Origin: Bispira polyomma
Lineage: Eukaryota
Assembly (NCBI GenBank): GCA_965649765.1
Contig: OZ287749.1
Coordinates: 39,928,001-39,992,000, forward strand
Length of the DNA stretch: 64,000 bases
Direction of reading: 5' to 3'
Position 1 is the first letter of the stretch. Each line of letters opens with the position of its first letter. Below, piece by piece: positions 5,817 to 61,632 of the stretch. The position numbers were made by a program, and so were the translations under genes. Below the pieces are notes generated by a model, which searched no databases, had not been told where the DNA came from, and saw only the letters and a program-made list of their open reading frames with translations.

Positions 5817-7790
5817 TAAATCTAATCTAATCTAATCGTACTTTTATAGCACTTAATCTTTGTACAACAAATTCTAAGGTGCAACTAACCTAAGCATTAA
5901 TCAAAAAAAAATCAGAAATGGGGGACGGATGGTGGTCATAACCAGAGAGACTACCGGGATGGTTGCGATGGCTAAGGTGGAAAGGCCTGTTCGAAAAGGT
6001 AGGCCTTCAGTTTACTCCTAAAAGAGGAGAACGTTTGAGCCAAGTGAACATGATCAGGCAGGCTGTTCCATATGAAGGGGCCATCATGAGCAAGGCAATG
6101 ATTGAAATGTACTTTGGATTTGTGGATGCGAGGGTCGAAAGTGGGAATGTTAAGATATAACTTATCAGGGTTGCTGCTCCTAGTCCTGACTGAGCATGTA
6201 TATTTGGATAGATGGGGGCTGAAATAGGTGGGTGATCCAGAATTTAGAAATTTCTATATAATTGTTGCAATTTTGAAAGCAACACAATATTTTATTGGGA
6301 GCCAGTGGAGTGACTTAAGTACAGGAGTAATATGAGAAAATTTAGAAGTTTTGGCCACGATGCGAGCCAATGAGTGTTGAACGTTCTGAAGACATTTGAG
6401 GTCACTACAAGATAGGGAACAAAACAGAGAGTTGCAGTAATCAAGCCTACTGCTGACCAAGGCGTTGGCAACAGCGATTGCAGTGGATTTGGTTAGATAA
6501 CGACTAATTCGCCTGAAATCACAGAGGCCAACAAAACATGATCTACACACGGATGCAACATGGTTGGAGAGGGAGAATTCAGAGTAAAACAACACACCCA
6601 GGTTGCGTACTTTGTCAGCTGGGAAAAGCCTGCTGCCAAGAATATCAACTGGGAAACAGCTGGACAGTTTTTCCCGTTGCAACTTGGAGCCAAACAAAAT
6701 AAACTCGGTCTTATCAGGGTTCAGCTTGAGTTTATTTGCTGCCATCCAGTGTTGTACATCAACAAGGCAGTTCTGTAAGGAGGTGAAAGCTGCCTGAGCA
6801 GAATCGGGTGTAAGGTGGATGTACAATTGGGTATCATCCGCATAGAAGTGAAAGTTTATGTTTTTGTATGCAGCAATGATCTTGCTGAGTGGGGTGGTAT
6901 ACATTGAGAACAAAATAGGACCCAGGACTGAGCCCTGGGGAACCCCAAATTTTAACCATGTAGGGTCGGACAAGATGGTGCCAATTTTGACCGATTGGAA
7001 TCTATCAGACAAATACGCCGTGAACCATTTAAGTGCAGTACCGTTGATACCAAACCAAGACGATAGGCACTCAAGAAGAACTTTGTGATCAATAGTATCA
7101 AATGCCGCCGACAGATCCAGCAGTACTAAGGCAGTAGGCATACCTTTAGATAAAGATATATGAACGTCATTTTTGATGCAGAGTAGTGCAGTCTCTGTAG
7201 AATGACCACTTCTGTACGCTGACTGATACTTATTGCATAGATTACTAACATCGAGATGTTGTTTGATCTGTAAGGCAACCACACGTTCAACCAACTTAGA
7301 GATATAGCAAAGGCCTGAGACAGGACGGTAGTTTTTCAAGTCAGCCTTTGGGAGAGAAGATTTTTTTATTAAAGGAGTGACAATGGCTTTTTTAAAATCA
7401 TTTGGAAAGACGCCATTGACCAATGAGAGGTTAACAAGTTTGGTGATTGAGGGCAATAAAATGTCAATACATTCCTTAACAAGGAATGTAGGCCGCGGAT
7501 CTAACAAGCAAGATTTTATGGGTGATGTAAGTATAATTTTCCTGACCTCATCAACAGTTACTGTGGAGAAACGGTTGAAGATGGTTGGTAGAGCTGATGG
7601 TAAAGGAGCATTTGGGGCAGCTGACGTAAAACTATCACGGATTCTGGTAATTTTATCAGTAAAAAAAGTACTAAAAATGTTTGCCAGTGATTTACTATTG
7701 CTGTTGTCGGGTAGTATAGTCTGTTTTTTCTGGTGTAGGGTGCTGTTTAATTTCTCCCAGAGTTTCTTTGAGTCACTTGGCTGCACATTT
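5817..7790 (-). mobile_element. 5'-truncated CR1/L2-like LINE with a 510-aa open RT segment
   Basis: NYRPVS, YQSAYR..HSTETAL, LDLSAAFDTIDH, GVPQGSVLGP, YADDTQ, LHWLP; (GATTA)n tail at 5817-5837. Confidence 0.93.
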
Positions 7791-12871: not shown

Positions 12872-13282
12872 CTACAAAGGTCTTGGGAAGAAAAACACAA
12901 AGCTGATAATGACAAAGGCAATGTACATCAAACCAAATATTCTGTCCAGCAGCACACCAAACAACTCCCAGTCTTTCTTCCAGTTTGCGCGGCTAGGTTT
13001 CAGCTGCATTTTGGGCATAACGTGAGTGACAATCTCTTTGAGTTTGACCCGGAGAGTCCTCAGTTCCTCTGCTATCCTCCTGAGCTGCTGTGGGTTGATG
13101 TTAGAGCTGTCTGCAATATGTAACTGTTCTCTAATCTCACATAGCTCTGTCTCTGACTCAGACAGGTCCACTAACAACAGCTGGTTCTTCTCACCACCCA
13201 CAGTCTGGCCAGTGCTTTTGGCAGGTAACTTGCTGGGTGCATCGTGTAACATCAATAACCTTCCACCACGGCTGTAGATTAC
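12872..13282 (-). CDS. Receptor coding exon 8 (intracellular loop, MA helix, M4, stop)
   Basis: Acceptor CAACACAG in phase 0; ...DWELFGVLLDRIFGLMYIAFVIISFVFFFPRPL*. A minus-strand AATAAA at about 12493-12488 may be the poly(A) signal. Confidence 0.9.
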   Translation of the reverse strand, partial: VIYSRGGRLLMLHDAPSKLPAKSTGQTVGGEKNQLLLVDLSESETELCEIREQLHIADSSNINPQQLRRIAEELRTLRVKLKEIVTHVMPKMQLKPSRANWKKDWELFGVLLDRIFGLMYIAFVIISFVFFFPRPL

Positions 13283-16200
13283 CTGTGTTGGGGTGTATAA
13301 ACAGAAATAGCTTCTATTATGTATGTCAATGATATAATTTAAGAGATCTGGTACAAATACCTACAGCAGTAATTGCTATCAGGCACTGAAGTGTTAGGAC
13401 AAAAACAAAACAAGGTTGATATATTTTGGATACAATTTTACTACGGCCTGGAGATTAAACTTACTTTTGTATTGTTCACTGTAGTTTACACTACTCCAGA
13501 AACTGCTTTAGACTTAAAAACAGTGGCAGTGCAATTATATACATTTGTTTATTTTATTGTTGGGAAATGTAATGCATAAACATGTACCTGTAAAATCAAG
13601 AGCCACCTGATTTCGCAAGTCTGTGTTTTTCTGTATTTCTTTGGAATATGCATGTCCAATTTGAAAGAGTTTGATAACTTTGAAAGGTAAGATTTATTCA
13701 ATTACACTCAGACTTAAATGTTGGGTGAGAATGTGAGTAAAGCCTATTGTACTACACCATAATTAGATCGACGATTGCCGAGGTTGCATAATTAGTTTTA
13801 AGATGGTTATCAATAATTCAGGAGTTTTCTCTTCAGTTTCTGGTGAAATGTAAATATACTTGTGAGTTTTCTTTCCATACCACAGAAAACCATTTTCATT
13901 GTCTGTATAACACTGTCACACCCACACAAATCTGTAGAGTTGGTCCTCAGGTGAAATACCTCACAACCTTTTTAAAATTAACTTAAGCAGGATGGCGACA
14001 AAGGTCTATCTCCTTATTGGGCTATAAATATTGCACATGGCATTAGTGAACGTTTCCATGCAGGAAACTTTTTGAGGCGACCAGCCGACGAATATAACAG
14101 GCAATTTTTAATTTTTATGTTTCTACACAATATTTGAGAAAAATAGATACCTGTATTTAAACCTGAATATCTTAGCCATTTCTCAACCGATTTTGATGCA
14201 ACAAAAAGCACAATATACCCGATAAAATAAGCTTTCTCACCATATTTTCATTAAATTTATACCTTCAGTAATGTTTGAGTTATTTAAAAAAAACGGCATG
14301 TTTACAAGGCGACTGGCCATTCCAGGCGATTTTTTTTCGCTCCTAGTACCGAAAAAATCGCCTGGCATTGCCTGTCGCCTATCGGCTTTGCTCAAATGGA
14401 AACACTTTGTTTTAAATCAATAAAACTGATAGAATCGCCGTCGGCCGTCGCCTGATCGCCTTAAAAAGTTGCCTGCATGGAAACGCTCACTTAGTAGCGA
14501 TGTAACTGTACTCTGCAGTGAAATTAATTTGAAACTTCCTGTCTCTTTATTTTGATTTCAGTCAAAAGGAATAAGGCTACTGAAAAAAATCCTCTATTGT
14601 GTAAGATGCATCTTCCATGATTAGTTTTATTTTGTTGTTATGGTTAACAATAGGAAGAATGGAGATTAAAATATCTGCAGGAAACAAAGGTAATTAGTTC
14701 TAAACCACAGATAAATTGTGCTATGAAAAGTGAGCAGTTGAAAGCCTCCTCAAAATCTACTTATAGAAAGTGTTTGTTTCTAAGAAAAGAGTAACAAAAT
14801 AAAGGACTTATGTAGGCAGGAAGCTTGATATGTTGAGCTTTGTTTGTAGAGATAGATAACTTTTTATAATTGACAAGCACTATGATCCATTCAAGTAGAA
14901 CAACAGAACATTACTACTGGGTGAATAAATAGAAGTTCTAAAAGTGACTTTACCAGATGCAACAAATTAAAACAGGGAAGTCATACAAAGTCTCAGTCAA
15001 GGTAGCAGACAAAATAAGCAGTTTAAATTTGAGAAGGATAGATTATTTAATAAGGAGTAGGTTCAAGGTTTGTATGTATTGATTACAATAGGTTCTCTGG
15101 AAGTAGAGTTTACACAGAAGTTGACTTTATTAACAACATACATTAATGAGTTGCAATAATTCAATCCACTGCTGACGAGTCTTAATCCACCACAACTGCA
15201 TATAGAAATCTGATGTCCTGACTATGCTGTTAGATTTATTTTGTTTTCTTTAAAAATAGATTAAATGCTAGTTGACAAAAGTATTATTAACACAATACCA
15301 AACAATACAGAAATTATAGAATGTTATATGATCAATTGTGTTTAACGCTTAAGAGAGGTCTACAAATGTCATACAAATGTTATCACGTCTCTTCTCTGCA
15401 TCATAGAACGAAATGTAGACCTGAAGAAAATCACTTAGAAATACATTTTTTCATACAAAGACTAGATTTCAGTATATTTTAATATTACATTTGATCAAAC
15501 ACGGTGATATAATTATATTGTTACAGACAAATATTGTAATACAAGGTTTTACCTTTAAGATACATGCAGGTAAAGGTCTGTTGGAACCCTTGGAAAAGTT
15601 GACCACAACTGTTGATAAAATAATTGCCAGCACAATGGAGACTATGTTGAAGCAGTAGTATACACCTACAATGGTATTCATTCAATGATCAGTCACATGC
15701 ATAAAATATTTGAACACTAGTAGATGCGAATTAAGCTGTAAGTAAAAAATAATAATATTAACTTTGGAATATTAATTTTACAGACCCTAATTCTTAGTAA
15801 AGATATACTAAATTAAATCAGTAATTTGAAACACAGACTGAGAATACAAGTCGAAATTTGGTCAACACATTTTGTAAACAAAAACTGAAAACATAAGCCA
15901 AAATTAAATAAATAAATAGTAATCATATCATATAATGGTTAAAAACAACAATCATGAAAACAATACATAGAAATTGTATTCTTTACATAACTGTATATAG
16001 AGCCAAGGTTATATTTAGCCATGGGCGGTTCTAAAGGTTCTTCAAATACATAATCAAGCTCAAACCCAAGCTCACTATATGTTTACACTGTCTTACGAAA
16101 GCTACTAAAGAATATACTCAGTTGTAAAAGTTTTTTTCTGTGTACATTACTGTGTGTATAAGACCATACTTACCCAGTAGAGGTACAGTAGCTGTTGTAG

Positions 16201-19200
16201 GAGGTGCAGCTTCCACTAGAATTAAGAGGAGCACCATGAAACTCCCAAATGTATTCATAGCTACAGCACAGTGTACAAAACAAAATAATTTTTAACATTT
16301 ATCAAAATTTTATAGTTATTAAAAGAGGAAAATAAAAAGAATATTTCTTAATTACTTCAGTTCAAAATGTTTTCAGGCTTTTTTTACCATTAATGTTTTC
16401 TGACACCTTTTTGCACTTTTATTATATTGCGATAAAAAAGAAGAAGCTATATTCACATAGGAAACTTTACATTTAGCCCCCTTGTTTCTATTACAGCTAA
16501 AACAGTCAGATTTTTGGTGTGGCCAAAATTATGTTCTGCTAAATTTTTTAAAGTTAATATTATTATTATTATTAATTTATAACGTGCTTATTGATGCTAT
16601 TGTTTTTTATGCTATTTTTATGTGGGAGGTCTTAATTGGTAATATTTAACGGAAAGGTTTTGACTTTGATAAAACATAGAGTGCATTTATCACACTGTGA
16701 TAATAGGTTTTGACTGAGGTAAAAAGTGCCCATTTGGCTGTACTTTTAATCTCAGCATAATAAACCGCTAAATGTGCCTTTCATGTTCTGTTGCTCTTTC
16801 AATTTAAAACTTAATTTTTTTTTGATTTGCAGCAATATTTTTCTGTAATTCAAGCCTTTTGATTACTTTTGGCATTTTTGTCTTTCATGTTCTTACGTTT
16901 TTTTCGAACTGCTTCTGAAGAGTATTAACATTCGAGTAATGACTTTAGAACTTCTCTACACCTCAGCTACTTTACAGAAATGGTATTTTGAAAACATAAA
17001 AAGCCACGATTTTATGCTATATTTCGAGAGACATACCATATAAACATCTGTTTTTGAAAAGACTTCACCCATTTTGCTATACAAGCTCTGTGTCATCAGC
17101 ATAGTAGGGTACTTAACAGATTTATACGAGTTAATGTGCGACATATGTAGTGTATATAACTAAAAAAGAATTAAGGCCAATTTTGGCCTGGAATCAAACC
17201 CAGAAATAAGAAATAACCATTTTAATTTTCCCAATCAAACTTTAATCTAAGGTGAAAAGATCGTCATTCAAGAGGTGTTCCATGGTTAATAGTGCTAAAT
17301 TACCCTAATTTTTTATTTATAATAGCGCAGTATCTGTTCAATGCCCACACTTGTAAGCAGACTGCTATTGGTAATCTACACCATTGCTTTCTAATTGTAC
17401 CTTGATCTATTCTGCAATTACCTTTCCCCCAAATTTTCTAACAAATAACTTAATCCTGACATTCGTCCATAGTATTTAAGGTAATCCTTATGGAATGGTT
17501 AGATGTATATTAACTCAGCTACACTCTTTGCCAATGAATTTGTTCTATCAGGCCTGTCACAACTTACCTAGTGAGGTCCTAATAGGCCTCTAAAGTGGTA
17601 ACCTTCCAGGTAATGTCCAATCAGTTACCAAGCGATGTTGTATCAGGTTTGTCCTAATGTACCTAGTAAGGTTCTGTCCGGCCTGTGATAACTTACCTAG
17701 TAAGGTTCTGTCCGGCCTGTGATAACTTACCTAGTAAGGTTCTGTCCGGCCTGTCATAACTTACCTAGTGAGGTTCTATCTTGCCTGTGATAACTTACCT
17801 AGTGAGGTTCTGTCAGGCCTGTGATAACTTACCTAGTGAGGTTCTGTCCGGCCTGTCATAACTTACCTAGTGAGGTTCTGTCAGGCCTGTCAAAACTTAC
17901 CTAGTGAGGTTCTGTCAGGCCTGTCATAACTTACCTAGTGAGGTTCTATCTTGCCTATGATAACTCACCTAGTGAGGTTCTGTCAGGCCTGTCATAACTT
18001 ACCTAGTGAGGTTCTGTCAGGCCTGTGATAACTTACCTAGTGAGGTTCTGTCCGGCCTGTGATAACTTACCTAGTGAGGTTCTGTCAGGCCTGTCATTAC
18101 CTACCTAGTAAGGTTCTGTCCGGCCTGTCATTACCTACCTAGTGAGGTTCTGTCCGGCCTATGATAACTTACCTAGTAAGGTTCTGTCCGGCCTGTGATA
18201 ACTTACCTAGTGAGGTTCTGTCAGGCCTGTCATAACTTACCTAGTGAGGTTCTGTCCGGCCTGTCATAACTTACCTAGTGAGGTTCTGTCCGGCCTGTCA
18301 TAACTTACCTAGTGAGGTTCTGTCAGGCCTGTGATAACTTACCTAGTAAGGTTCTGTCAGGCCTGTGATAACTCACCTAGTGAGGTTCTGTCAGGCCTGT
18401 GATAACTTACCTAGTGAGGTTCTGTCCGGCCTGTCATAACTTACCTAGTAAGGTTCTGTCAGGCCTGTCATAACTTACCTAGTGAGGTTCTATCAGGCCT
18501 GTGATAACTTACCTAGTAAGGTTCTATCTTGCCTGTGATAACTTACCTAGTGAGGTTCTGTCAGGCCTGTGATAACTTACCTAGTGAGGTTCTGTCCGGC
18601 CTGTCATAACTTACCTAGTGAGGTTCTGTCAGGCCTGTCAAAACTTACCTAGTGAGGTTCTGTCAGGCCTGTCATAACTTACCTAGTGAGGTTCTATCTT
18701 GCCTATGATAACTCACCTAGTGAGGTTCTGTCAGGCCTGTCATAACTTACCTAGTGAGGTTCTGTCAGGCCTGTGATAACTTACCTAGTGAGGTTCTGTC
18801 CAGCCTGTGATAACTTACCTAGTAAGGTTCTGTCCGGCCTGTCATTACTTACCTAGTGAGGTTCTGTCCGGCCTATGATAACTTACCTAGTAAGGTTCTG
18901 TCCGGCCTGTGATAACTTACCTAGTAAGGTTCTGTCCGGCCTGTGATAACTTACCTAGTGAGGTTCTGTCAGGCCTGTGATAACTTACCTAGTAAGGTTC
19001 TGTCCGGCCTGTGATAACTTACCTAGTGAGGTTCTGTCCGGCCTGTCATAACTTACCTAGTAAGGTTCTGTCCGGCCTGTGATAACTCACCCAGTGAGGT
19101 TCTGTCCGGCCTGTGAGGTGGTAACCAGAAGACAGCTACAGTCAGACAGGAGAGGAATACACATGGCAGTGTGAGGATGTAGGTAGAGAAGACAACCTTT

Positions 19201-22200
19201 CTGTCCAGTATGAGCTCATATACAATGACAGTGACGTGACGTGGGGAGTTACTGGGCTCATACATTGTCTTGGCTGAAGTGTTCACTATGGTCCAGGCAC
19301 TGGCCTCCTTAAAGTCCTCACCCCAGTTACTCAGGTCAAAGCTTCCTGGAGTACAAATACAATGGTCAAACACCAATACAATGGGATTACATGCCCAGAT
19401 AGCATTAAATCTTACATACAATCCAATGTTTGCTAAGTACTGGTATCTGACATGAGCTAAGACAGATAGATAATAAGACCTTACTAACACAGAATGGTAA
19501 GAACTGGGGGTGTAGTAGTTGTCGTCAGTACTGGTACTGTATGTGACAGTACTTACAGAAAAGGAAAAGCTCATCAGTGCAAGAATCAAACAGTTACTGC
19601 ACTGAGTATATATATGTCACAGGCCAAATTAAAATCCAGGCGGATTTGAACTCCGCCTAGGCGAGATTAAAATTCTAATCTCGCCTAGGCGGAATCAAAA
19701 TTGTAATCTTGCCTAGGCGGATTTAAAATCCGCCTAGACCAAATTAAAATTTTGATTTCGCCTAAGCGGAATTAAAATTTCCAAGTTTGTCTAATAGAAT
19801 TTTAATCTCGCCTAGGCGGATTTATAATCTGCCTAGACCAAATTGAAATTTTGATTTCGCCTAGGCAGATTTTAAATCCGCCTAGGCGATATTAAAATAG
19901 GGGGAATTAAAATTTCAGATTGGGGGAAATTTCAATTATTTCATTTTTGTATGCAGTAAAAGTATGGATAACAGCCTTAAAATTGAACTCATTTTATTTC
20001 TTAATAAAGCACTTTGCATTCATGGTTTAAAACATTAATTCATACATGGAATATAGTAATTACATTAATTATTAACAACATTTCTGTATAAAGCACTTTT
20101 CATTCATGGTTTAAAACATTAATTCAGACACTACCAAGTGCTACCAATTCATTCCTGGGCACATATAAAAGAGCAGTGCACCAAGAAAGTCTTTGGGGAT
20201 TACCACTGTGAAGTTTTTGAAAAGGCATAAATGATTATATATTTAACCCTTTGGGAGGCATGTGATTTTTCACTGCAAATATCAATTGCAATTACAGTGT
20301 TTTACATTCTATCAGGGCAGTGAAGAAATCAGGGGAAGTACTGAGACAAAGACAATTGCTAAACCAATTAATGACAATAAACAGTAGGTGGTCATATAGG
20401 TAAGACAAATAATAGACAGACAAACAATAGACATAATATAAATGTTATTATTTAAATTATTTCAGTAATCCTTATATGTTGTATACTTCAGTACTTTACC
20501 AATAAATACAATTCCAAACCTTTTGACACCCAAAAAGTACCCCTAATAAGGCTATATTACACTGATAATACACTAATATTACATATTAAGCTAGTAAAAA
20601 ACATTGGATTTTAATGTAGTGTAGGGTAAACAAAACCAAAAAATTATTGGTGTGGTCAAGTTTAAATTTTACCCAGGCATACAGCCTTTTAATTAATGCA
20701 GTTACTATAATATTCCATGTATGAATTAATGCTTTGAACCATGAATGGAAAATGCTTTAAAAAGAAATAAAATAAGTTCAATTTTAAGGTTGTTATCCAT
20801 ACTTTTATTGCATACATAAATGAAATAATTAAAATTTGCCTCAATCTAAAATTTTAATTTCCCCTATTTTAATCTCGCCTAGGCGGATTTTAAATCCACC
20901 TAGGCGATTTTAAATCCGCCTAGGTGAGATTAAAATTCTAAAAGACAAACTTGAGAATTTTAATTCCGCCTAGGCGAAATCAAAATTTTAATTTGGTCTA
21001 GGTGGATTTAAAATTCGCCTAGGCGAGATTAAAATTTTGATTAAAAAATCCGCCTGGATTTTAATTTGGCCTGTGACATATATATATTAATTTTTAATTA
21101 GATTTTAATTTGGCCTGTGACATATATATATATATAGTAATTAATACAGTGGAGCCTCCACTTGGCAAATATTTTTGGAGAAAAAAACTTTGAGTAAATG
21201 TAAATTTGAGCCAGTATAAATGTGTTTAGGCTAACTTCTGATATTACAGGTTCAACTGTGTTAGTATTAACTTATGGTAATATATTTGTAAGCATGTATT
21301 ATTTTCTACTGCATATTTAACTAATTGTATTTTTACACCATCCTCCAATTATAAAAGGTGAATTTTAAAATATTAACGGTGCATACACACTCTTGCAGTT
21401 TAAGTTTGGTCTGCAAATCAACTCAACTTTATGAGTTTATCTAAAAGGTCTCTGCCCTTTCCCTCATTATATACCAGGTAATGTTTAAAGATATCACGAA
21501 TTTAATTTCAATATGATACAACTGAACAAAAAACTAACATATCTTAAGGTATCAAAGAGATTCAACCCTCTCAATTAGGGCACATGGTTTTTTTCTTAGA
21601 CTTTACAGAGTCAGATGTCAATTAATTGACTCTATAATAAGACAGATAAAGCAGACGAATTAGAGTATGTGCAGGAAAATAATAAAAGAATCTTTCTTCT
21701 AAATGATTTGTTACAGTGGTCAATACAGAGTAAAAATATTAACAGTACCTAGGCAGTATCAGTTTACTAAGTGTTTTCTGGTACAATAAATAAAACTATT
21801 AACATGTAACCTATTCAACAGAACAAAAAAAAAAAACAATTGCTCTCGGTCTCACGTTCGATTTCAAATCTAAAAATACCTATAAGAACATCAAGCATTC
21901 ATATCTGGATCAAGGCAAATCAGAAATATTTTAAATGGACAAGCTCTGAACAACTATTTGCATGTATAAAATGTGGTATACAGACATATACGGGCCTGCT
22001 TCAGTGTATTGTAATGCATAAGATAAGAATATCAACCAGTGGTCTACTTTAAATTTAACTTCTAGCTGTTTTCATTTGTCAGTGATTTGTTATCGATCTT
22101 GTGATTGATCGGTGACCCATGTCAAATTTACTTTTGGGGTTGGATCAGCAAGTGAGTTATTTAAATCCGTGTGATTTATGGGCGGCCCACTTTTAATCTA

Positions 22201-25200
22201 TATCTAATTCTGATTGGCCAGTTAGTTGTTTCAATCCTTGTGATTGGTCGGTGACCCACATGTAATTTATATTTAATTTTGATTAGCCATTGAGTTGTTT
22301 CCATCTCTGTGATTGGTCAGTGACCCACCTCTAATGCCTATGTCCAGTTCAGTGGTGTTGTAGAGCCAGGAACCCATGAGTAGCTGACACTTCTGTCTGT
22401 CAAAGGGGAAGTTGGTGAGGTTGAGAGCACAGGACACACTGTAGAGGACCAGTGTGTAGTGGATGACCTGGCCCGTGTATCTCACTGTGGCAGAGGTATC
22501 CCTGCTTGTCTTCTGGACATTGCCTCTGTAAGCATATGCACACGTGCACACGTGCACAAAAGTTTAGGCCTCTGTAAGTATATGGACATGTGTACAAATG
22601 CTCAGGCCTCTGTAAGTATATGGACATGTGTACGAATGTTTGGGCCTCTGTAAGTGTATGGACATGTGTACAAAGGCCTCTAAAAGTATATGGACATGTG
22701 TACGAATGTTTGGGCCTCTGTAAGTATATGGACATGTGTACAAATGTTTGAGCCTCTGTGAGTATATGCACATGTGTACAAATGTTTGAGCCTTTGTAAG
22801 TATATGCACATGTGCACAAAGGTTTGGGCCTCTAAGTATATGGACATGTGTACAAATGTTTGGGCCTCTGTAAGTGTATGGACACGTGTACAAATGTTTG
22901 GGCCTCTAAGTATATGGACATGTGTACAAAGGCTTGAGCCTCTGTAAGTATATGGACATGTGTACAAATGTTTGGGCCTCTAAGTATATGGACGTGTGCA
23001 CAAATGTTTGGGCCTCTAAGTATATGGACATGTGTACAAATGTTTGGGCCTCTGTAAGTATATGGACATGTGTACAAATGTTCGGGCCTCTGTGAGTATA
23101 TGGACATGTGTACAAAGGTAGGGGTAATATATAAGGGCTGGTGATTCATAAGCAAAATCAGCATTTTTTTGAGTGTGCATTGCATAACATGTCATGCCTG
23201 TGCTTTTATCGAAAGTATCTTTTAAAATATGGTTATTGTAAAAACTGAAGTTAAAGCCTGTATTGGTGATTTATCCAACTTGTTACAATTAATTAAGTTA
23301 AAGGAATTCTTCTGGTATCCACAAGATCGTGCCTTTATTTGTTGCTGACAAGACAAGAGCACTCAAAATGCAGATTTGGCGTATTTTGCCATGGTGTGTA
23401 TTTGTAAACTAATACCGCCATTTTGCACAATGTTTTCTGTGTCCCATATCTACATAGATCACATCAAAGCCCATCCAATGGTAAAACCAGATACTATTTA
23501 AACCTATTGTTATCAGCTGAAGGTGTAAATTAGTTGGTTTTGAAATTTGAAAGTCTTTGGTCATATTTGTGACGGTCAGATTTATTGGAGACCACTAACC
23601 TAAGGTACAAGTACTGGGCACACTTTCCCACATAAAGGAAGTAGACTTCTGCACTGTTCTCAGAGCTGATAGGTGGGGATATTAAAACAGGTGATTCTGA
23701 CCACCATGGCCCCAATTATCAGCTGGTGAACTGAAGATGGTACCTTTGTCCAAAAAAAGCTGTTGTGTTTTGTGAGTTTACGTTTGTGTAGCGGGCAGCT
23801 TGTATTAGTCTAATAATATTAACATTTGTTGTAGAACTACAACAAATCATTATAAAAACCTCCATGTTAACAATGTTTTCTCATGTCTTGTATTACTATG
23901 CTGTCAATTAAAATTTGATTAGTGCTATCGCGAAGTGGTACAATGGTAGTGAATTCATTTGGTATTGCAAAGTATAATATATAGTACCTACCCATTGAAA
24001 CAACTAAAACAAAGATCTAGCCAACATGTGTATAAACATGGCCATTTGAAAAAAATCCACGATTGGCAGAATTTTGAGCAGTTAAACACATTTTTGAGGA
24101 AATCGCCTACTTTCTTTGCCCATGGGAAAATTCCCAAATTGCATATGGTTGTTTTATCCTTAATACAGAGTGATGAAGACATGCCAAACCTCTATAATTA
24201 CTTGACATGTGTGGAATATAGCTTCTAGAAAAAGGTGGAGACTGCTACAAGTAAGAATACTTTCTACTTTTTGTCCCTTAATTTTCTACTTTTATATGAT
24301 ATTTTTGTTCAGTAACAGCGTAATCTCAGTGGGCGAGTATTTTAAGGTGCATGAAAAAAGACATCCTGCAAAGGTGCATCAAAACAACACCATGGAAAGG
24401 AGCATTTTAATGTCCTCTATTACTGCACTGTTAATTATATTGGTAACGTGGAGGTTGTCAGAATGGCAGTAGTTATTTGGGGTAACAAATGTTGGTAAGT
24501 GTTTTTAGAAGTATACCACTTTCGAGCTATACAAGGGAGCATGAATAAGACACCTTGTAAAAGTTCTTTAAATAAGACACCTTGCAAAGGAGCATAAAAT
24601 AAAATACCCTGCAAAAGTGCATGAAATAAGACACCTTGCAAAGAAGCATGAAATGAGACATCTTGTAAAGGAGCATAAAAGAAGAAAAAGACCCCCGACA
24701 CACACATGAGAGGGAAACGGGAATAGATATTTATGGTTACCGGCAAATTTAAATTATAAACAGGTTATATTTTCTCCGTAAATTTAGAGTGAGTCTTCTT
24801 TTCGTGTTTTTTTTTCCAGTTTGTCCTTATTCCCAGATTCATATTTTACTTAGTGCCTCAAGAAAACAAGACACGATTTTTTTAATCAGTACAAAACTTC
24901 CAAGTGAGCCCTGGTAAAGAAGGGCCTTGTGACAGTTTCACTAATTTGTAAGTTGTACCAGTAATCCTGTCATTCTATTCCAGCTGTTGTCCCTAAGTTA
25001 TATATCCACCCTAGGACAATAAAATTAAACCCCTTGTGAGAATTAATTCAGGGCATATAAAGACATCGCAGAAATGGGTTATTTTTTTTCTGGTATTTAA
25101 CTGTTTACCAGTAACTACACTTTGTTTGACATTTTTTTTATTAGTTAATACTCAACTTTTTTCTATTTCTTGAAGAAAATAATGTATGTGTGGAAACCCA

Positions 25201-28200
25201 TAAAAGTTCGTGATACAGATTTACTACAGATCAATTTGTCACATAAAATTACATTAAACAATAATAATGTCTGTAGGGTACACCTCCTCGACTGGTGCCT
25301 TGTTACAAATAAAATGTCATGAACTTAGTTTTATTCCTAAATCTTGGTGAGATAGCTCTATAAAAATAAAAAGATCACCAAGATGCTAGTGTTAGGGTAA
25401 ATTTCTTTGTTGTAGTACACTATAATATATCAGATACCTTTAACTCTGTTCAATACGTTAATTAATAACACAAACAACAAGTATCCCTGTAAGTCAGCCT
25501 AGTTAAAAACTTCAGATAACAGATATGCAGTTTCATTTAAAAATTAAGCTTACCAAACTAAGCGATACTCCAAACTTTTATTGAATTCCTCATGGAATGA
25601 GCATTTTATTTATTATACATTTATCTACTTATCTGGTATCCAAACGCTTATGTATGTTTACTTAACTGCTCAAGTACAACCAACTAGCCCCAGCAACTGG
25701 CAATACCCTGGCTGAAGAGAGAAACTTGAGGAGAGCACCATTTATCAACGCCCTCAGGTTGGTTTAGCCTGCTGTTGGGGATAGGACCAGTCAACTGCTA
25801 TTTTAACTGGTCATCTGAGCCAGTATGTATCTAGCTATACACGGTCACTCAATGCTGGGATCAAACCCTGGTTTTCTGTGTTCCTGGACGAGAGTGTTAC
25901 CCACTAGTGAATTACAATTAAAATACTAAAAATGAGCAAATTATTGTAAGTGTCAGCTATACAAAAGACACATCAGAAGGATGTTTTAGTTCGGTTATTC
26001 AAAATAAGTTTTATTCCCCTATATGGCTGTAGTAATTAATATACCTCGCTAAATGAAAATATCACATGCAATAACACTTAATTAACAGAGCAATACAGCT
26101 GTTTCTAGTTAATTAACCGAGCAATTCACGGTTTCTAGTTAATTTGCCATACAATTTAATGGCTTGCTAAATGAGCTTGGTGCATTATTTTTGGTAATTA
26201 ATTGTAGTAGGTGACTTTATTTTAAATCTTAGGAAGTACGCTTTTGTAATAACTATTTTAAGTATGATATCTACTTGATCTCTTCCTTCTGTCTATATTA
26301 TCAGAATGCTATGCGGAGTGTGAAACATAGCACAAGATGAAGTAAATGGGAATCATGGTTCACCAAACGGCTGGTTGTAGACTTTTTGGACGTCAAAAAC
26401 AACTGGTTTGGCTAATACTACAACACATGGAAAGGCATTGTGCTATACAATGGAAACTGATAAAAAGAATGTATTCAAACACCTCTTCATAGCATTGTCC
26501 ATTTTTTTCAGGGTGTGTGTGCTTTAGTTTATTTAGGATTTATGTTGTTACCAGGGGGATGGCACATAAGAACTAGTGTCTAGGGAGTTAAACTGGTTAT
26601 TAGGAGGTTCCCAGTTAACTTGCACTTTGGAAATTAGTCTAGTAATAAGATCACTAGTTAATCTCATAGTATCACCTTAATGGTGATTGTGGTGACTAAC
26701 AAGCTTGGGTAAGATGTAAAGATCCAATTTGACTGCTGATGAGGGTTAATTAGCCGTGTATTAGGATCACGATTAATGGTTTGTCAATTCTGATGTTGTG
26801 CTTCAAATGATGCCTGACATCAACAGGGCACCTTAAAAATCCACAGTTTAATTTAGCGTGACTTCCAACAATGTTAATGTCACATTATTTCAGCCAGGTT
26901 GTTTGGTGTAGGAACCAGTGGGATTTGAGCTACTATTTCGGTGTGAGGCAAGTGATCCTGCTTTGAGTACTTTAAATGGGCCTGTGTCATAAGCCAGCAT
27001 TGAACCAGGGACTTGGTGATCACGATACCTGCTCCCTTACCACTAGGCTACATGGGACCTGTCTGTAGTCTCCTGTAGTATACAGTTAAACTAAGTGGTT
27101 GTGGATCGTTCACCACTGGTCATTTGTCATCATATTATAAGACTGTTTGCTGGTGGTGGATATTATTGGTTAACTGTTGGAAACTATTATTATAATACTC
27201 ACGTGTTATAGAGTTGTATGTCAGGCATCCAGATAAAGCTAGGGTCAATCCTCAACTTGTCCACTCCCCCATACTGATGGGGATCCCACCTCAGGAACTC
27301 GTCCACCCACATCTGTTAGTATAACCACACAGTACAGGAGAAGGACCTGTTAATATTTAACTACATTACCATGGTAAACTTATATTTACTTAAGTTTCAT
27401 TTTACCATGCCATGTTGCATTCTCAAAGAATGAAAAACTTATTATACATTACTTAATTTATAGTGTACATATCTTTGCATGCACTCAAATACTTAAGTTG
27501 TGGTGTGTACATATCTTAGTATGCACTCAAATACTTAAGTTATGGTGTAAATTTAACAATTAAATTAGTTTTTAGTTAATATTGTGGTTGCATGCAATTG
27601 TGGTTATATTATATGTTGCAAATATTTATACTAGGCATACAATCTGCTCCAAATTACACTAGTCCTGTCCAGATCACACAAGTTCTGAGCAGGTTTTTCC
27701 CCGTTTATGCCCGACCACACCCATTATCTCCAGGTCTCTCCAGATGTGCTTTTAGAGCCGACAACCCACGGAGGTTTTGAACATGTTTTAAAATTCAGGG
27801 AATCAGAAAACTCATTATTTTCGAGTGCATACTACATAAGTCTTTGTTATAGTAGTCCGGTTCCTGAAAATGCTGAGCCTTGATTTTGGTTTGCATTTAG
27901 ATTTTGTGTCCTGATTGAATCTAATAAGTATAGAATGACTTGTTTTGGGAGACAACATAAACTTCGTTCAGTTACTTGAAGTCACAACCCCACATCTAGG
28001 GATGTTACTAATCAAACTTATCCCTATCAGTATATTCAGTCCAAGTCATTACACTACTCACATATCTGGTCCATACACTAAGGTTTAGAGTTTTTCTCTT
28101 TTCATCGAAGGTCATCTCTATGAGTGCCAGGTCAAGGTTGACCTTTACTGTAGAGGTCACGGAGTGCACTGGTCTGGCAAACACAGAGCCTTGCAGTGAG

Positions 28201-31200
28201 TTGTAGGCAGTAAGTATGTCATGAAGGAGTCTCCTTTCCTCTGATGACCTGTAAAACAGAGCCGAGAGACTTAAACTTACAGCTGGACAACTTTGCATTA
28301 TTTCGTAGCACTATCCATGGGCTGCGGTGGCCTAGTGGTTAGCAAGCATTGCGTTTCACAATCACTGGTCTCTCACCTCTGGTGTGGGTGAGTTCGAATC
28401 CTGTCGATGCCTATGTGGGAAAGGTGGTAGTTCCTTACTGTGGGCCGCTTGTTTCAGTGCAGAACCTTGATCAACTGTATGCAGTGTTTCCTCCAGCGTT
28501 TCCAACTACCCGTCCCAATATAACCTAAACAGGTACTAGAGTGGATGTCAAATATCGTAGCACTATCCAACAATATATTATAATCAAACTTTTATAGTGC
28601 TTAAGCTCCATTATAGTGGATTCTAAGGCGCATTTATCATTATCATATTCAAGTTTCGTAACGTTTTTTGAGGGAAGGTGGTTGTATCCAAGGTGATGCT
28701 GGACTGAATATGTAATTAAGGAGGAAGGGGTGTAGTGGCAATGATTGCTGTTAATATGTAACATTTTTAGTAAATATAGGTATATTAATTTACAGTGAAA
28801 CTATCCAGTTCTATATGTTATGTATAGTGTAATTTACTGTATCTTTGCTGGAGTTGATTTAAAATTTTACTTTATAAAACCTGTTTGAAACGATGCTGTA
28901 CAGTTGGACAATGTACGATTTACATGTTTAAAGGAATAAGTTTGGTTTATTAATCAGTTAAAATTAATTGGTGTGTACTCGAACATACAACCAAAAAGAT
29001 ACATAGAGATAAATCAGAAACAGTTATCGGTTGTTTTAGTTAAATGGTGATTGCACTATGCCAATTTGGTCCCCGACCTTTCCGATTTTTATGTCCGGAG
29101 CAAAATTTGTATAGGTCCAGGTGCAAAAATGGGGCGAACATGCTGCTCGCAAAAGGTATCCAACATGCTTAATATTTTTAAAAAGTCCCCCGGACTAGCC
29201 CCTCGACCTCTAAAAGCGGGAAGGTCGGTATCGCCAAATAAGTTTGATCTTATTGTTATTACGTTCTGTCTGATAGGTCTTATCTGACGCCCTGTCGTAA
29301 CACTGGCCCCGTAAAGTATAGGTCGTGGGTGAAAACGGGGTGAATGTAAAGAATATAAAACCATTTTGTCAGTTATTTTGCCATAGCAGTCCCGATTTTG
29401 ATTATTAGAAGCACGATCATGATAAACGGGGGGCTACAGATCCGTCAGATCCTATCGCCAATAAATTCGATCCTATCGCCAGTAAGTTTGATTCGAGGGC
29501 AATACGTCAGATCCTATCGCCATTAAGTTCAATTAAAAGTAAATAAATAAATGTTGACAGTGTTTGTCTCTTTGTAATTATACACACTAACTTAGGACAC
29601 TAAAGTAACAAACAGTATACATGTACTGTTTAGTAGAGTTACTGCTGATGAATGGACAGAACAGTGTAGATAACTATTAAAAGGGGTTAACCTCACAACC
29701 GTAGCAACAGTTAAAGGCTGTACAAGGTACAATTGAGAAATGATTGACAGATTATTTAGCTTGACAACGAAAAAAAAAGATTCTAATCATGAAATGTCAA
29801 ACTGATATTTTTTATAATTACGAAATTAATGCTTTTCAAAAGGAATCCATTTAAAGAGAGAGTGATGCCTGCTTCGTAAAGTAAAGCTCCTAGTTAAAAA
29901 AAACTAAGTTAGTATTTCTTTATTGTAAAAAAATAGTAACAAGTTGATTAATTTTTCAAATTCACTTGGAGCCTGCTTTGAAACTTGTGAGTAGAGTTAA
30001 AAAACTAAAGTCTTTCAGTGTGTGTGTGTGTATAAAAACACAATGAGATTTAGTAACAGAATTTTTAAGAGCTTTAATTATTGTAATCTAATACCTACTT
30101 GAGATCTGTAATTAAAGAGGACAAGGGGGCATCAAGTATCAGGAGTTGGGCTATATGACACTCTCCCCATGCCATAAGGCTCATCTTAACAACACGGAGG
30201 ACAGATACATTACCTCTAAGACCTAAACATACACCTGATCTCACCATTCTCCTGCCGGCAAAGATTTCTGACAAATTTTTGGCTAACTTTGCCCTTTATA
30301 GCAATTGTCTTCCAAAGTAACCTGTTTATTTACAAATGTCAACATTGGGTACTGAAAGTATAGACTATTTTTTTAGGAACCTTCTTTACCTTGCTTACTT
30401 GGGTCCAACATATTTTTAATAAATTATTTTTTTACAGCATTGGGTAAGGTATTGCATATTGTATTGCATGTTTCATTTCTAACACGCTTTATGGATAATA
30501 TAATCAGCATGTGGTCGCAGTGGTCTAGTGGTTAGACTGTCAGATTTTGGATCTGAAGGATATGAGGCTTCAGTTCGATCCTCACTGCAGGCCTGGAGAT
30601 TGTATACTTGGACAAGGTATTTCCCACAAAGTTGTCCCTCTCTATCCAGGTGTATAGGGAGCTGAGAGTGAACAACCGGTTGACAAGTGGAAGAGTCCAG
30701 GTTGGGGTGTCAACTGTGTACAGCTACATTTACATATGATAGGAAATGTATAACCAAGTTGTAGACATGCCAAAGTAAAACCCTGATACTTGCAGGACGT
30801 AAATAGGCTATTTTGTTAAAGCTTGATTGTGTACAATGTATATGTTACAGTGAATATGCGTAATCAGATATTATTAGGTAGTTGTTACACAGATTCACTG
30901 AACAAAATTCAGTGAATATGTGTAAGGGATAAACGTTATTTTCTCATAAAATTATGTAACAATATGCACATTAAATGGTTTATGGATTCTTTTAATGAAA
31001 TTAATTAATATCAGATACAAGTGTAACTGTTCAGTTTTACACATCTCAAATATGTTTAAGGGATTAAAGTCATTTTTACATAAAATTTATGTTTAAATAT
31101 GCACATAAAAAAATTATAAGTTCTGTCATTGAAAAAAAATTAATTATGTATTAATGTGTATGAGGGATTATACATATACTGTATTAATATTAATAGGATA

Positions 31201-55644: not shown

Positions 55645-56025
55645 TGATTAAACTTACCTTCAGAAGTTCCACTACACGAGACCCACTGTCCTATATGGTA
55701 ACCTCTGAAGCAGTGACTTGACACAAACCAATGCTAGTAATCCACTTTAAATATCTAGTATCACTCTGATTAAACTTACCTTCAGAAGTTCAACTACAAA
55801 ACACTCACTGCCATATGGTAACCTAAGTCACCTCTAGCAGTGACTTAACACAAACCAATGCTTGTAATCCACTTCAAATATCTAGTGACACTCTAATTAA
55901 ACTCACCTTCAGAAATTCCACAGCAGGACACTCACTGCCATATTGTAACGTATGTCATCTCTAGCAGTGACTTGACACAATCTAACATGCTTGTAATCCG
56001 CTTCAAATATCTAGTTACACTCTAT
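55645..56025. repeat. About 122-126-bp tandem repeat (3 units), each carrying a minus-strand GAAG|GTRAGT donor motif
   Basis: ATTAAACTYACCTTCAGAA at about 55647, 55769 and 55896. Confidence 0.88.
55907..56025 (-). other. Candidate non-coding (5'UTR) exon, possibly of the receptor gene
   Basis: Strong acceptor TTCTCTACTTTTTTATTATTGTAG and strong donor GAAG|GTGAGT. Stops in all three frames. Exon 1 has its own acceptor, so an upstream UTR exon is expected. The link to the receptor gene is inferred. Confidence 0.4.
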
Positions 56026-60739: not shown

Positions 60740-61632
60740 ATTATGAACTACTCTAAACTAAAATTTAACCCGCACAAAAGAGAATTCATCCTCATAGGAA
60801 ACAAGAAAAACAGTGAACTCCTAAAATCTTTGTTTCCCATCTCCATGCTGGGAAAAGACATACTACCTTCTGAAAATGCCAAAAACCTGGGTGTCACTTT
60901 TGATTCAGCGTTTTTGTTCGACACTCATATTGCCAACATCTGTCGCTCCTGCCATTGCCATATACACGACATCAAAAGAATCAGAAACCATCTGTCCATG
61001 GACACAGCGATAACTGTGGCAAAATGCCTTTTGTGAGTAGCCGCCTCGACTACTGCAACTCTCTTTTGTACGGAGCAAACAAGTCACACATTAAAAAGCT
61101 CCAGTCCATCCAAAACTACCTATTTAAGGTCATTTTTCGCCTGGGTTGTCGCACAGACGTCACTCCTTACCTCAAAAAATTGCACTGGCTGCCCATTCAT
61201 TCTCGTATTTTGTTCAAGATTCACATTACTACTTTTAAGGCTGTAGTCACTCAACAGCCAACTACCTTGCCTCCCTTTTGTCCTTCAGTAACCTCAAGAG
61301 AGGCAATAGACTCTCTGTTTCTTTGGTAAGACCAGTCAGGAAGGCAGGATCCAGATCGTTCTTCACTGCAGCTCCACTGTTATGGAACAATCTCCCAGTC
61401 AACCTTAGATCAGTTGACACACTTATCGGTTTTAAGAAAAAGCTGAAAACCTATCTTTTTAATCTTGCCTACCCACCTTAGCTTCCCTCGTGCACACTCC
61501 CACTTCCCTCCTTACGACTTTGCAATGTCCATGGACTTAATGATTGGACCAATGATTCTGCTGTTGCGCTTTAGAAGATGCCTAGCACCAATAAAGCGCG
61601 TTAAAAATTCCTAATAACAATAGTAACAATAT
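60740..61632 (+). mobile_element. 3' fragment of a CR1/L2-like LINE
   Basis: LKFNP.K.EFILIG, KNLGVTFDS, SRLDYCNSLL, LHWLP, FKKKLKTYLFNLAYPP*; 3'UTR and an (AAT/AAC)n-like tail. Confidence 0.88.

What the first reader, a model, noticed from the sequence alone, without database searches (positions are those of the whole stretch)
17660..19116. About 42 decoy 5' splice sites, closer to consensus than the real one, directly downstream of exon 5
Seen: the sense unit is ATCACAGGCCGGACAGAACCTCACTAG|GTAAGTT, i.e. the last about 25 nt of exon 5 plus a consensus AG|GTAAGT donor. The real donor is TGG|GTGAGT (19090-19089), which has fewer matches to U1. Use of decoy 2 or any later decoy includes the in-frame TAA at 19055-19053 and truncates the protein after M1. 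Each unit also juxtaposes TAG and GTAAGT, the geometry of a recursive-splicing (ratchet) point, although the pyrimidine tract is poor. Inference: this 1.4-kb U1-binding array must either be ignored, compete with the real donor, or be removed stepwise.
Basis: partly seen in the sequence, partly recalled or inferred. Interest (0 to 1): 0.8.

Follow-up and report, generated by a model that had tools for sequence, protein, structure and literature searches.

The report
Splice-donor minisatellite in acetylcholine receptor gene
The end of one exon of an intact nicotinic-receptor-like gene, with its splice donor, has been copied 43 times in tandem; this is a known kind of repeat (amphioxus "mirages", human F7 intron 7), it is common in this genome, and nothing here shows that it regulates the gene.

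Summary
Observation confirmed. A 34-bp minisatellite (43 units, 17660-19116, minus strand) consists of the last 26 nt of exon 5 plus the first 8 nt of intron 5 of an intact nAChR-like gene. Unit 1 holds the real donor (TGG|GTGAGT), fixed by a stop-free 452-codon frame and the same intron position in 13 paralogs. 36 of 42 downstream copies read TAG|GTAAGT, closer to consensus; copy 2 onward gives a premature stop. It is a new member of a known kind: exon-intron-boundary minisatellites, which are reported not to disturb splicing (amphioxus mirages, PMC3087553; F7 IVS7, where only the most upstream donor is used, PMC1557585). Six unrelated boundary arrays sit in paralogs of this genome and another at this gene's exon-4 acceptor, so it looks like a mutational habit rather than a device. 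Recursive splicing is unlikely. No RNA data exist here, so usage is untested. What remains open: the copies are near-perfect donors, a case F7 did not cover, so leak is possible, and copy 1 would give an NMD-escaping single-helix isoform. The scan had noted such arrays elsewhere in this genome.

The parts
19091..19345 (-). Exon 5 of nAChR-like gene (end of ligand-binding domain, M1, M1-M2 linker); numbering assumes one unseen signal-peptide exon upstream
   Evidence: Pfam Neur_chan_memb weak hit; stop-free frame; 49-60% identity to homologs
19083..19116 (-). Unit 1 of the array: last 26 nt of exon 5 plus first 8 nt of intron; holds the real donor TGG|GTGAGT (GT at 19090-19089)
   Evidence: same intron position in paralogs and in two foreign loci
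17660..19082 (-). Units 2-43: 42 intronic copies, each with a pseudo-donor (36 TAG|GTAAGT); includes an identical 7-unit block repeated 22 units apart
19049..19082 (-). First pseudo-donor unit (GT at 19056-19055); its use adds 34 nt and shifts the frame, which stays open into the last exon
19053..19055 (-). In-frame TAA met when pseudo-donor 2 or any later one is used
17560..17593 (-). Degenerate orphan copy with TAG|GTAAGT, 95 nt past the last unit
16174..16260 (-). Exon 6 (M2, M2-M3 loop); its acceptor at 16261-16262 is the partner of the exon 5 donor
   Evidence: homologous exon in paralogs
22526..23116 (-). Second boundary array in the same gene: 36-38-bp units upstream of exon 4, nine with a copy of the acceptor (CT[T/C]ACAG|AGGC); all nine give premature stops if used
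12872..28248 (-). Host gene, exons 28248-28062, 27312-27203, 22525-22329, 19345-19091, 16260-16174, 15665-15553, 13282-12872; all GT-AG; 452 codons without internal stop

Best explanation
A boundary-spanning minisatellite ('mirage', F7-IVS7 type). A 34-bp stretch covering the end of exon 5 and its donor was duplicated in tandem (shown by sequence) and expanded by slippage or unequal exchange (inferred; a 7-unit block is repeated exactly). The edge units are left out of homogenisation, which is why unit 1 (TGG|GTGAGT) and the last unit differ from the bulk (inferred). The spliceosome defines exon 5 and uses the most upstream donor, so the 42 copies leave with the intron (inferred from precedent, not shown here). 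Rare slips to copy 2 or later are removed by nonsense-mediated decay (inferred: the stop lies 230 nt or more before the last junction). The array is tolerated, near-neutral DNA, one of many such arrays in this genome.
For: Unit equals exon end plus donor. Host frame intact with the first donor only; intron position conserved in 13 paralogs and two foreign loci without such an array. Unrelated boundary arrays in paralogs: L013 34 bp x17.5 at the same intron, L051 60 bp x9, L052 61 bp x8, L050 37 bp x2.2, L060 65 bp x3.2 (donors) and L060 70 bp x2.8 (acceptor), plus this gene's exon-4 acceptor array. Modest enrichment at exon edges: 9 of 22 arrays vs 4.8 expected, P=0.027; 7 vs 3.5, P=0.046. Donor columns are no better conserved than the rest of the unit (4/9 vs 8/25 variable; same in three paralog arrays). 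No unusual fold (z 0.58). Precedent: only the most upstream F7 donor is used (PMC1557585); mirages do not appear to disturb splicing and exclude cluster edges from homogenisation (PMC3087553; PMC3902484).
Against: No RNA data, so first-donor use is not shown. In F7 the copies equal the real site; when made perfect (CAG/gtgagt) they took 70-90% of splicing from a weak upstream site, and the copies here differ from a perfect site only at position -3. The enrichment tests are weak, use approximate exon edges, and two exons were added by hand after seeing the arrays, which biases them upward.
Confidence: 0.75

Rival explanations
1. Leaky competition without a selected role. The stronger copies capture a sizeable share of splicing; most products are degraded, lowering output, and the gene tolerates it.
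For: Copies score higher by matrix. Perfect downstream sites won 70-90% in F7 minigenes. All 42 copies carry A at -2 where the real site has G.
Against: The real site is itself strong: TGG/gtgagt scores 91 on the F7 paper's scale, against 74 for the F7 site that lost. U1 duplex energies are equal. Precedent in amphioxus shows no aberrant mRNA.
Confidence: 0.17
2. A selected regulatory switch: copy 1 yields an NMD-escaping isoform with the ligand-binding domain, M1 and about 110 novel residues, or array length tunes receptor level through unproductive splicing.
For: The copy-1 frame stays open for 96 codons after the junction and stops inside the last exon; synonymous shuffles stay open that long in 0.7% of trials.
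Against: That test is post hoc; merely escaping the 50-nt rule happens in 32% of shuffles; the same shifted frame has stops in L017, L050, L066 and L067. The array is not shared by any paralog or homolog examined and its donors show no extra constraint.
Confidence: 0.05
3. Recursive (ratchet) splicing removes the array stepwise at the TAG|GT junctions.
For: All 42 copies juxtapose TAG and GT. Recursive splicing has been reported in short and medium introns too (PMC10156609).
Against: The TAG is simply the exon's Leu codon end (CTA G) copied with the donor. Upstream T fraction 0.10 vs 0.30-0.50 at real acceptors; a competing AG 8 nt upstream in every copy, while real acceptors have 18 nt or more free of AG. 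0 of 43 sites meet Y5+N0-4YAGGT, though the gene's 7 real acceptors fail the same tract test, so that test is weak. A one-unit step (34 nt) is below usual minimal intron size (own knowledge).
Confidence: 0.03

Closest known systems
Human F7 intron 7 37-bp VNTR (Borensztajn et al. 2006, PMC1557585)
   Same: First unit spans the exon-intron boundary; every later unit carries a pseudo-donor; similar unit length (37 vs 34 bp); real site begins TGG/gt.
   Different: F7 has 5-9 sites identical to the real one; here 42 copies, nearly all stronger by matrix than the real site. F7 usage was measured; here it was not. Invertebrate gene.
Amphioxus 'mirages' (Adh3, globins BflGb6/9, TnC, PGBD5; PMC3087553, PMC3902484)
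   Same: Tandem repeats spanning exon-intron boundaries at both donors and acceptors, recurrent across genes of one genome, unit within the 10-160 bp range, edge units divergent.
   Different: Different animal group; higher copy number than the globin cases (3-6); length instability and normal splicing not tested here. The original Adh paper (PMC117041) was not held, so it is cited through these two papers.
Recursive splice sites (ratchet points; PMC10156609)
   Same: YAG directly followed by GT.
   Different: No usable pyrimidine tract, competing AG nearby, 34-nt spacing, 2.8-kb intron, origin explained by exon-end duplication.

Membership tests
Exon-intron boundary minisatellite (mirage / F7-IVS7 type) | Tandem repeat whose edge unit spans a real exon-intron boundary | tested here: met
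   Unit 1 = 26 nt exon + 8 nt intron; boundary fixed by frame and paralogs
Exon-intron boundary minisatellite (mirage / F7-IVS7 type) | Most but not all units keep the splice signal | tested here: met
   41 of 42 copies GTRAGT or GTAGGT, last one GTACAT
Exon-intron boundary minisatellite (mirage / F7-IVS7 type) | Locus-specific sequence, recurrent as a class across genes of the genome | tested here: met
   Single locus; six unrelated arrays in paralogs
Exon-intron boundary minisatellite (mirage / F7-IVS7 type) | Concerted evolution inside, divergent edge units | tested here: met
   G at -2 only in unit 1, last unit degenerate, exact 7-unit block repeat
Exon-intron boundary minisatellite (mirage / F7-IVS7 type) | Normal splicing at the authentic site | not testable with these tools
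   No RNA run holds the gene
Exon-intron boundary minisatellite (mirage / F7-IVS7 type) | Length polymorphism or somatic instability | not testable with these tools
   Only short contigs of DNA runs; none spans the array
Recursive splice sites | YAG immediately followed by GT | tested here: met
   43 YAGGT sites
Recursive splice sites | Acceptor-like context upstream of the YAG | tested here: not met
   T fraction 0.10 and AG 8 nt upstream; Y5 motif 0/43, but that motif also fails at this gene's real acceptors
Recursive splice sites | Intermediates or lariats at the site | not testable with these tools
   No RNA data

The most novel reading that the evidence does not exclude
The array drifted to donors stronger than the real one, and copy 1 is used at a regulated rate to make an NMD-escaping, single-helix receptor isoform, with array length tuning the ratio. 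A minisatellite would then act as a splicing rheostat for a Cys-loop receptor.
Probability: 0.05. Interest if true: 0.6.

Novelty: new member of a known kind. Interest (0 to 1): 0.2.

Why it matters
As a single locus it matters little: the class is described and usually silent. Its value is as a test case. With 42 copies that are near-perfect donors behind a strong real donor, it covers a strength combination the F7 experiments did not, so one RNA-seq set would test first-come donor selection in an invertebrate. The genome-wide habit of amplifying exon boundaries, so far mainly reported from amphioxus in the papers found, is more interesting than this locus and bears on intron gain by tandem duplication.

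Tried and rejected
RNA search: only three runs hold the gene, none on record as RNA; laid on 19020-22545 they behave as DNA contigs and show no splice joints. The array itself was kept out of that call because the tool turns away long repeats. Dispersed-element origin of the unit: rejected, single locus; the 9-nt match to the end of the inverted-repeat element in intron 4 is treated as chance because those bases are coding. Alternative real donor inside the array: rejected by frame and paralog intron position. RNA structure masking the copies: no signal in the first 300 nt. Selection on the pseudo-donors: no excess conservation. Orthologs in close relatives: none available; L066 and L067 are distant homologs without such an array. 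The big protein search was not needed. Literature searches for this repeat class in molluscs or annelids found nothing relevant. The species was not determined here.

Full report
Observation. Tandem Repeats Finder gives a 34-bp array at 17660-19116 with 42.9 copies, 92% matches and no indels. On the minus strand a donor GT recurs every 34 nt from 19090 to 17662, 43 in all, with one degenerate orphan at 17567. Each unit is the last 26 nt of an exon plus the first 8 nt of the intron. Unit 1 reads TGG|GTGAGT; the 42 copies read TAG|GTAAGT (36), TAG|GTGAGT (3), TAG|GTAGGT (2) and TAG|GTACAT (1, the last). The sequence was found only at this locus. DNA contigs from three runs match exon 5 and unit 1 without differences and pile up over the units, so the array is real, although those data give no copy number.

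Host gene. Seven exons on the minus strand (28248 to 12872), all with GT-AG introns, give 452 codons with no internal stop when the first donor is joined to 16260. Exons match Pfam Neur_chan_LBD and Neur_chan_memb, so this is a nicotinic-receptor-like Cys-loop subunit. The same phase-1 intron after the motif R-T-x-L or its equivalent is present in 13 paralogs and in two foreign loci. That fixes 19091/19090 as the real boundary. Exon numbering assumes one unseen first exon. The model was searched exon by exon; the joined search was left out.

What using a copy would do. Copy 2 or any later copy includes the TAA at 19055-19053, 230 nt or more before the last junction, a normal NMD substrate. Copy 1 adds 34 nt, shifts the frame and stops 92 nt inside the last exon, so it would escape junction-based NMD. 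Synonymous shuffles stay open that long in 0.7% of trials but escape the 50-nt rule in 32%; the shifted frame is closed in four homologous loci. The test is post hoc and I give it little weight.

Are the copies stronger? By an approximate matrix recalled from memory, 96 against 85; by predicted U1 duplex with G-U pairs, equal. The F7 study scores TGG/gtgagt, our real site, at 91; downstream sites up to 91 never competed with an upstream site, while perfect ones took 70-90% from an upstream site of 74. Our case, strong real site with near-perfect copies, lies outside what was tested, so leak cannot be ruled out.

Is it special? No. Among 35 paralog loci, unrelated arrays span a donor in L013 (34 bp x17.5, the same intron), L051, L052, L050 and L060, and an acceptor in L060; an array in L058 ends a few bases before an acceptor. 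The same gene has an array of acceptor copies upstream of exon 4, all non-productive, and a degenerate 69-bp repeat starting at the exon 4 donor. Arrays touch exon edges about twice as often as random placement (P=0.027; P=0.046). These tests are weak and biased upward because two exons were added after inspection. Earlier scan notes list many more such arrays in this genome; I checked only my own loci. Donor columns vary as much as the rest of the unit in four arrays, so there is no sign of selection to keep the pseudo-donors.

How it arose and works. Shown: the unit derives from the exon end; an identical 7-unit block recurs 22 units apart; the first and last units diverge from the bulk. Inferred: local duplication, expansion by slippage or unequal exchange, and exclusion of edge units from homogenisation, as described for globin mirages. 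This explains why the copies share A at -2 and mostly A at +3 while the real site has G, without any need for selection; whether the exon or an early copy changed cannot be told. Inferred from precedent: the most upstream donor is used and the copies are removed with the 2830-nt intron.

Recursive splicing. The TAG|GT geometry is a by-product of copying a Leu codon end with the donor. The 20 nt upstream have T fraction 0.10 (real acceptors 0.30-0.50) and an AG 8 nt away in every copy (real acceptors are free of AG for 18 nt or more). None meets the published minimal motif, but the gene's real acceptors fail its tract requirement too, so I rely on the first two measures.

Comparison with what is known. 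It meets every sequence-level feature of exon-intron boundary minisatellites: human F7 IVS7 (PMC1557585) and amphioxus mirages, reported not to disturb splicing (PMC3087553; PMC3902484). The name 'mirage' came as a lead from an earlier scan note and was then verified in those papers. Normal splicing and length instability could not be tested. It differs in copy number and in the copies being nearer consensus than the real site.

Limits. No RNA run holds this gene. No close relatives were available.

Verdict. Real, correctly described, a new member of a known kind, most likely silent (0.75), possibly leaky (0.17), unlikely to be a selected switch (0.05) or recursive (0.03). Interest 0.2.

Noticed in passing
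window 22526-23116 (-): 36-38-bp array upstream of exon 4; nine units copy the acceptor; each would give a premature stop.
   Followed up: yes
window 22143-22335 (-): Degenerate 69-bp repeat starting exactly at the exon 4 donor; copies keep the intronic half (GTGGG) but not the exonic half.
   Followed up: partly
window 19608-21136: About 1.5-kb high-copy element with terminal inverted repeats, flanked by TA runs, in intron 4; contig depth thousands of times the single-copy level. Looks like a non-autonomous DNA transposon.
   Followed up: partly
window 55709-56024 (-): 127-bp repeat preceded by an acceptor-like tract, with GAAG|GTRAGT in three copies; no open frame seen, perhaps a repeated non-coding exon.
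   Followed up: no
window 19091-19125 and 16174-16260 (-): The M1-M2 linker reads P-H-R-P-D-R-T-S-L, lacking the usual cation-channel glutamate; many paralogs and foreign homologs share P-D-R-T, so it marks a subfamily, possibly anion-selective (own knowledge).
   Followed up: no
L013 916-1509: A paralog has an unrelated 34-bp donor array (17.5 copies) at the very same intron; its copies mostly equal the real donor.
   Followed up: yes
window 6254-7786 (-) and 60955-61329 (+): ORFs resembling LINE reverse transcriptase fragments, by eye only.
   Followed up: no
L022-L034: Weak hits with stops, many in tandem at about 5-6 kb spacing on C1 and C2, probably a repeated element rather than receptor exons.
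   Followed up: no
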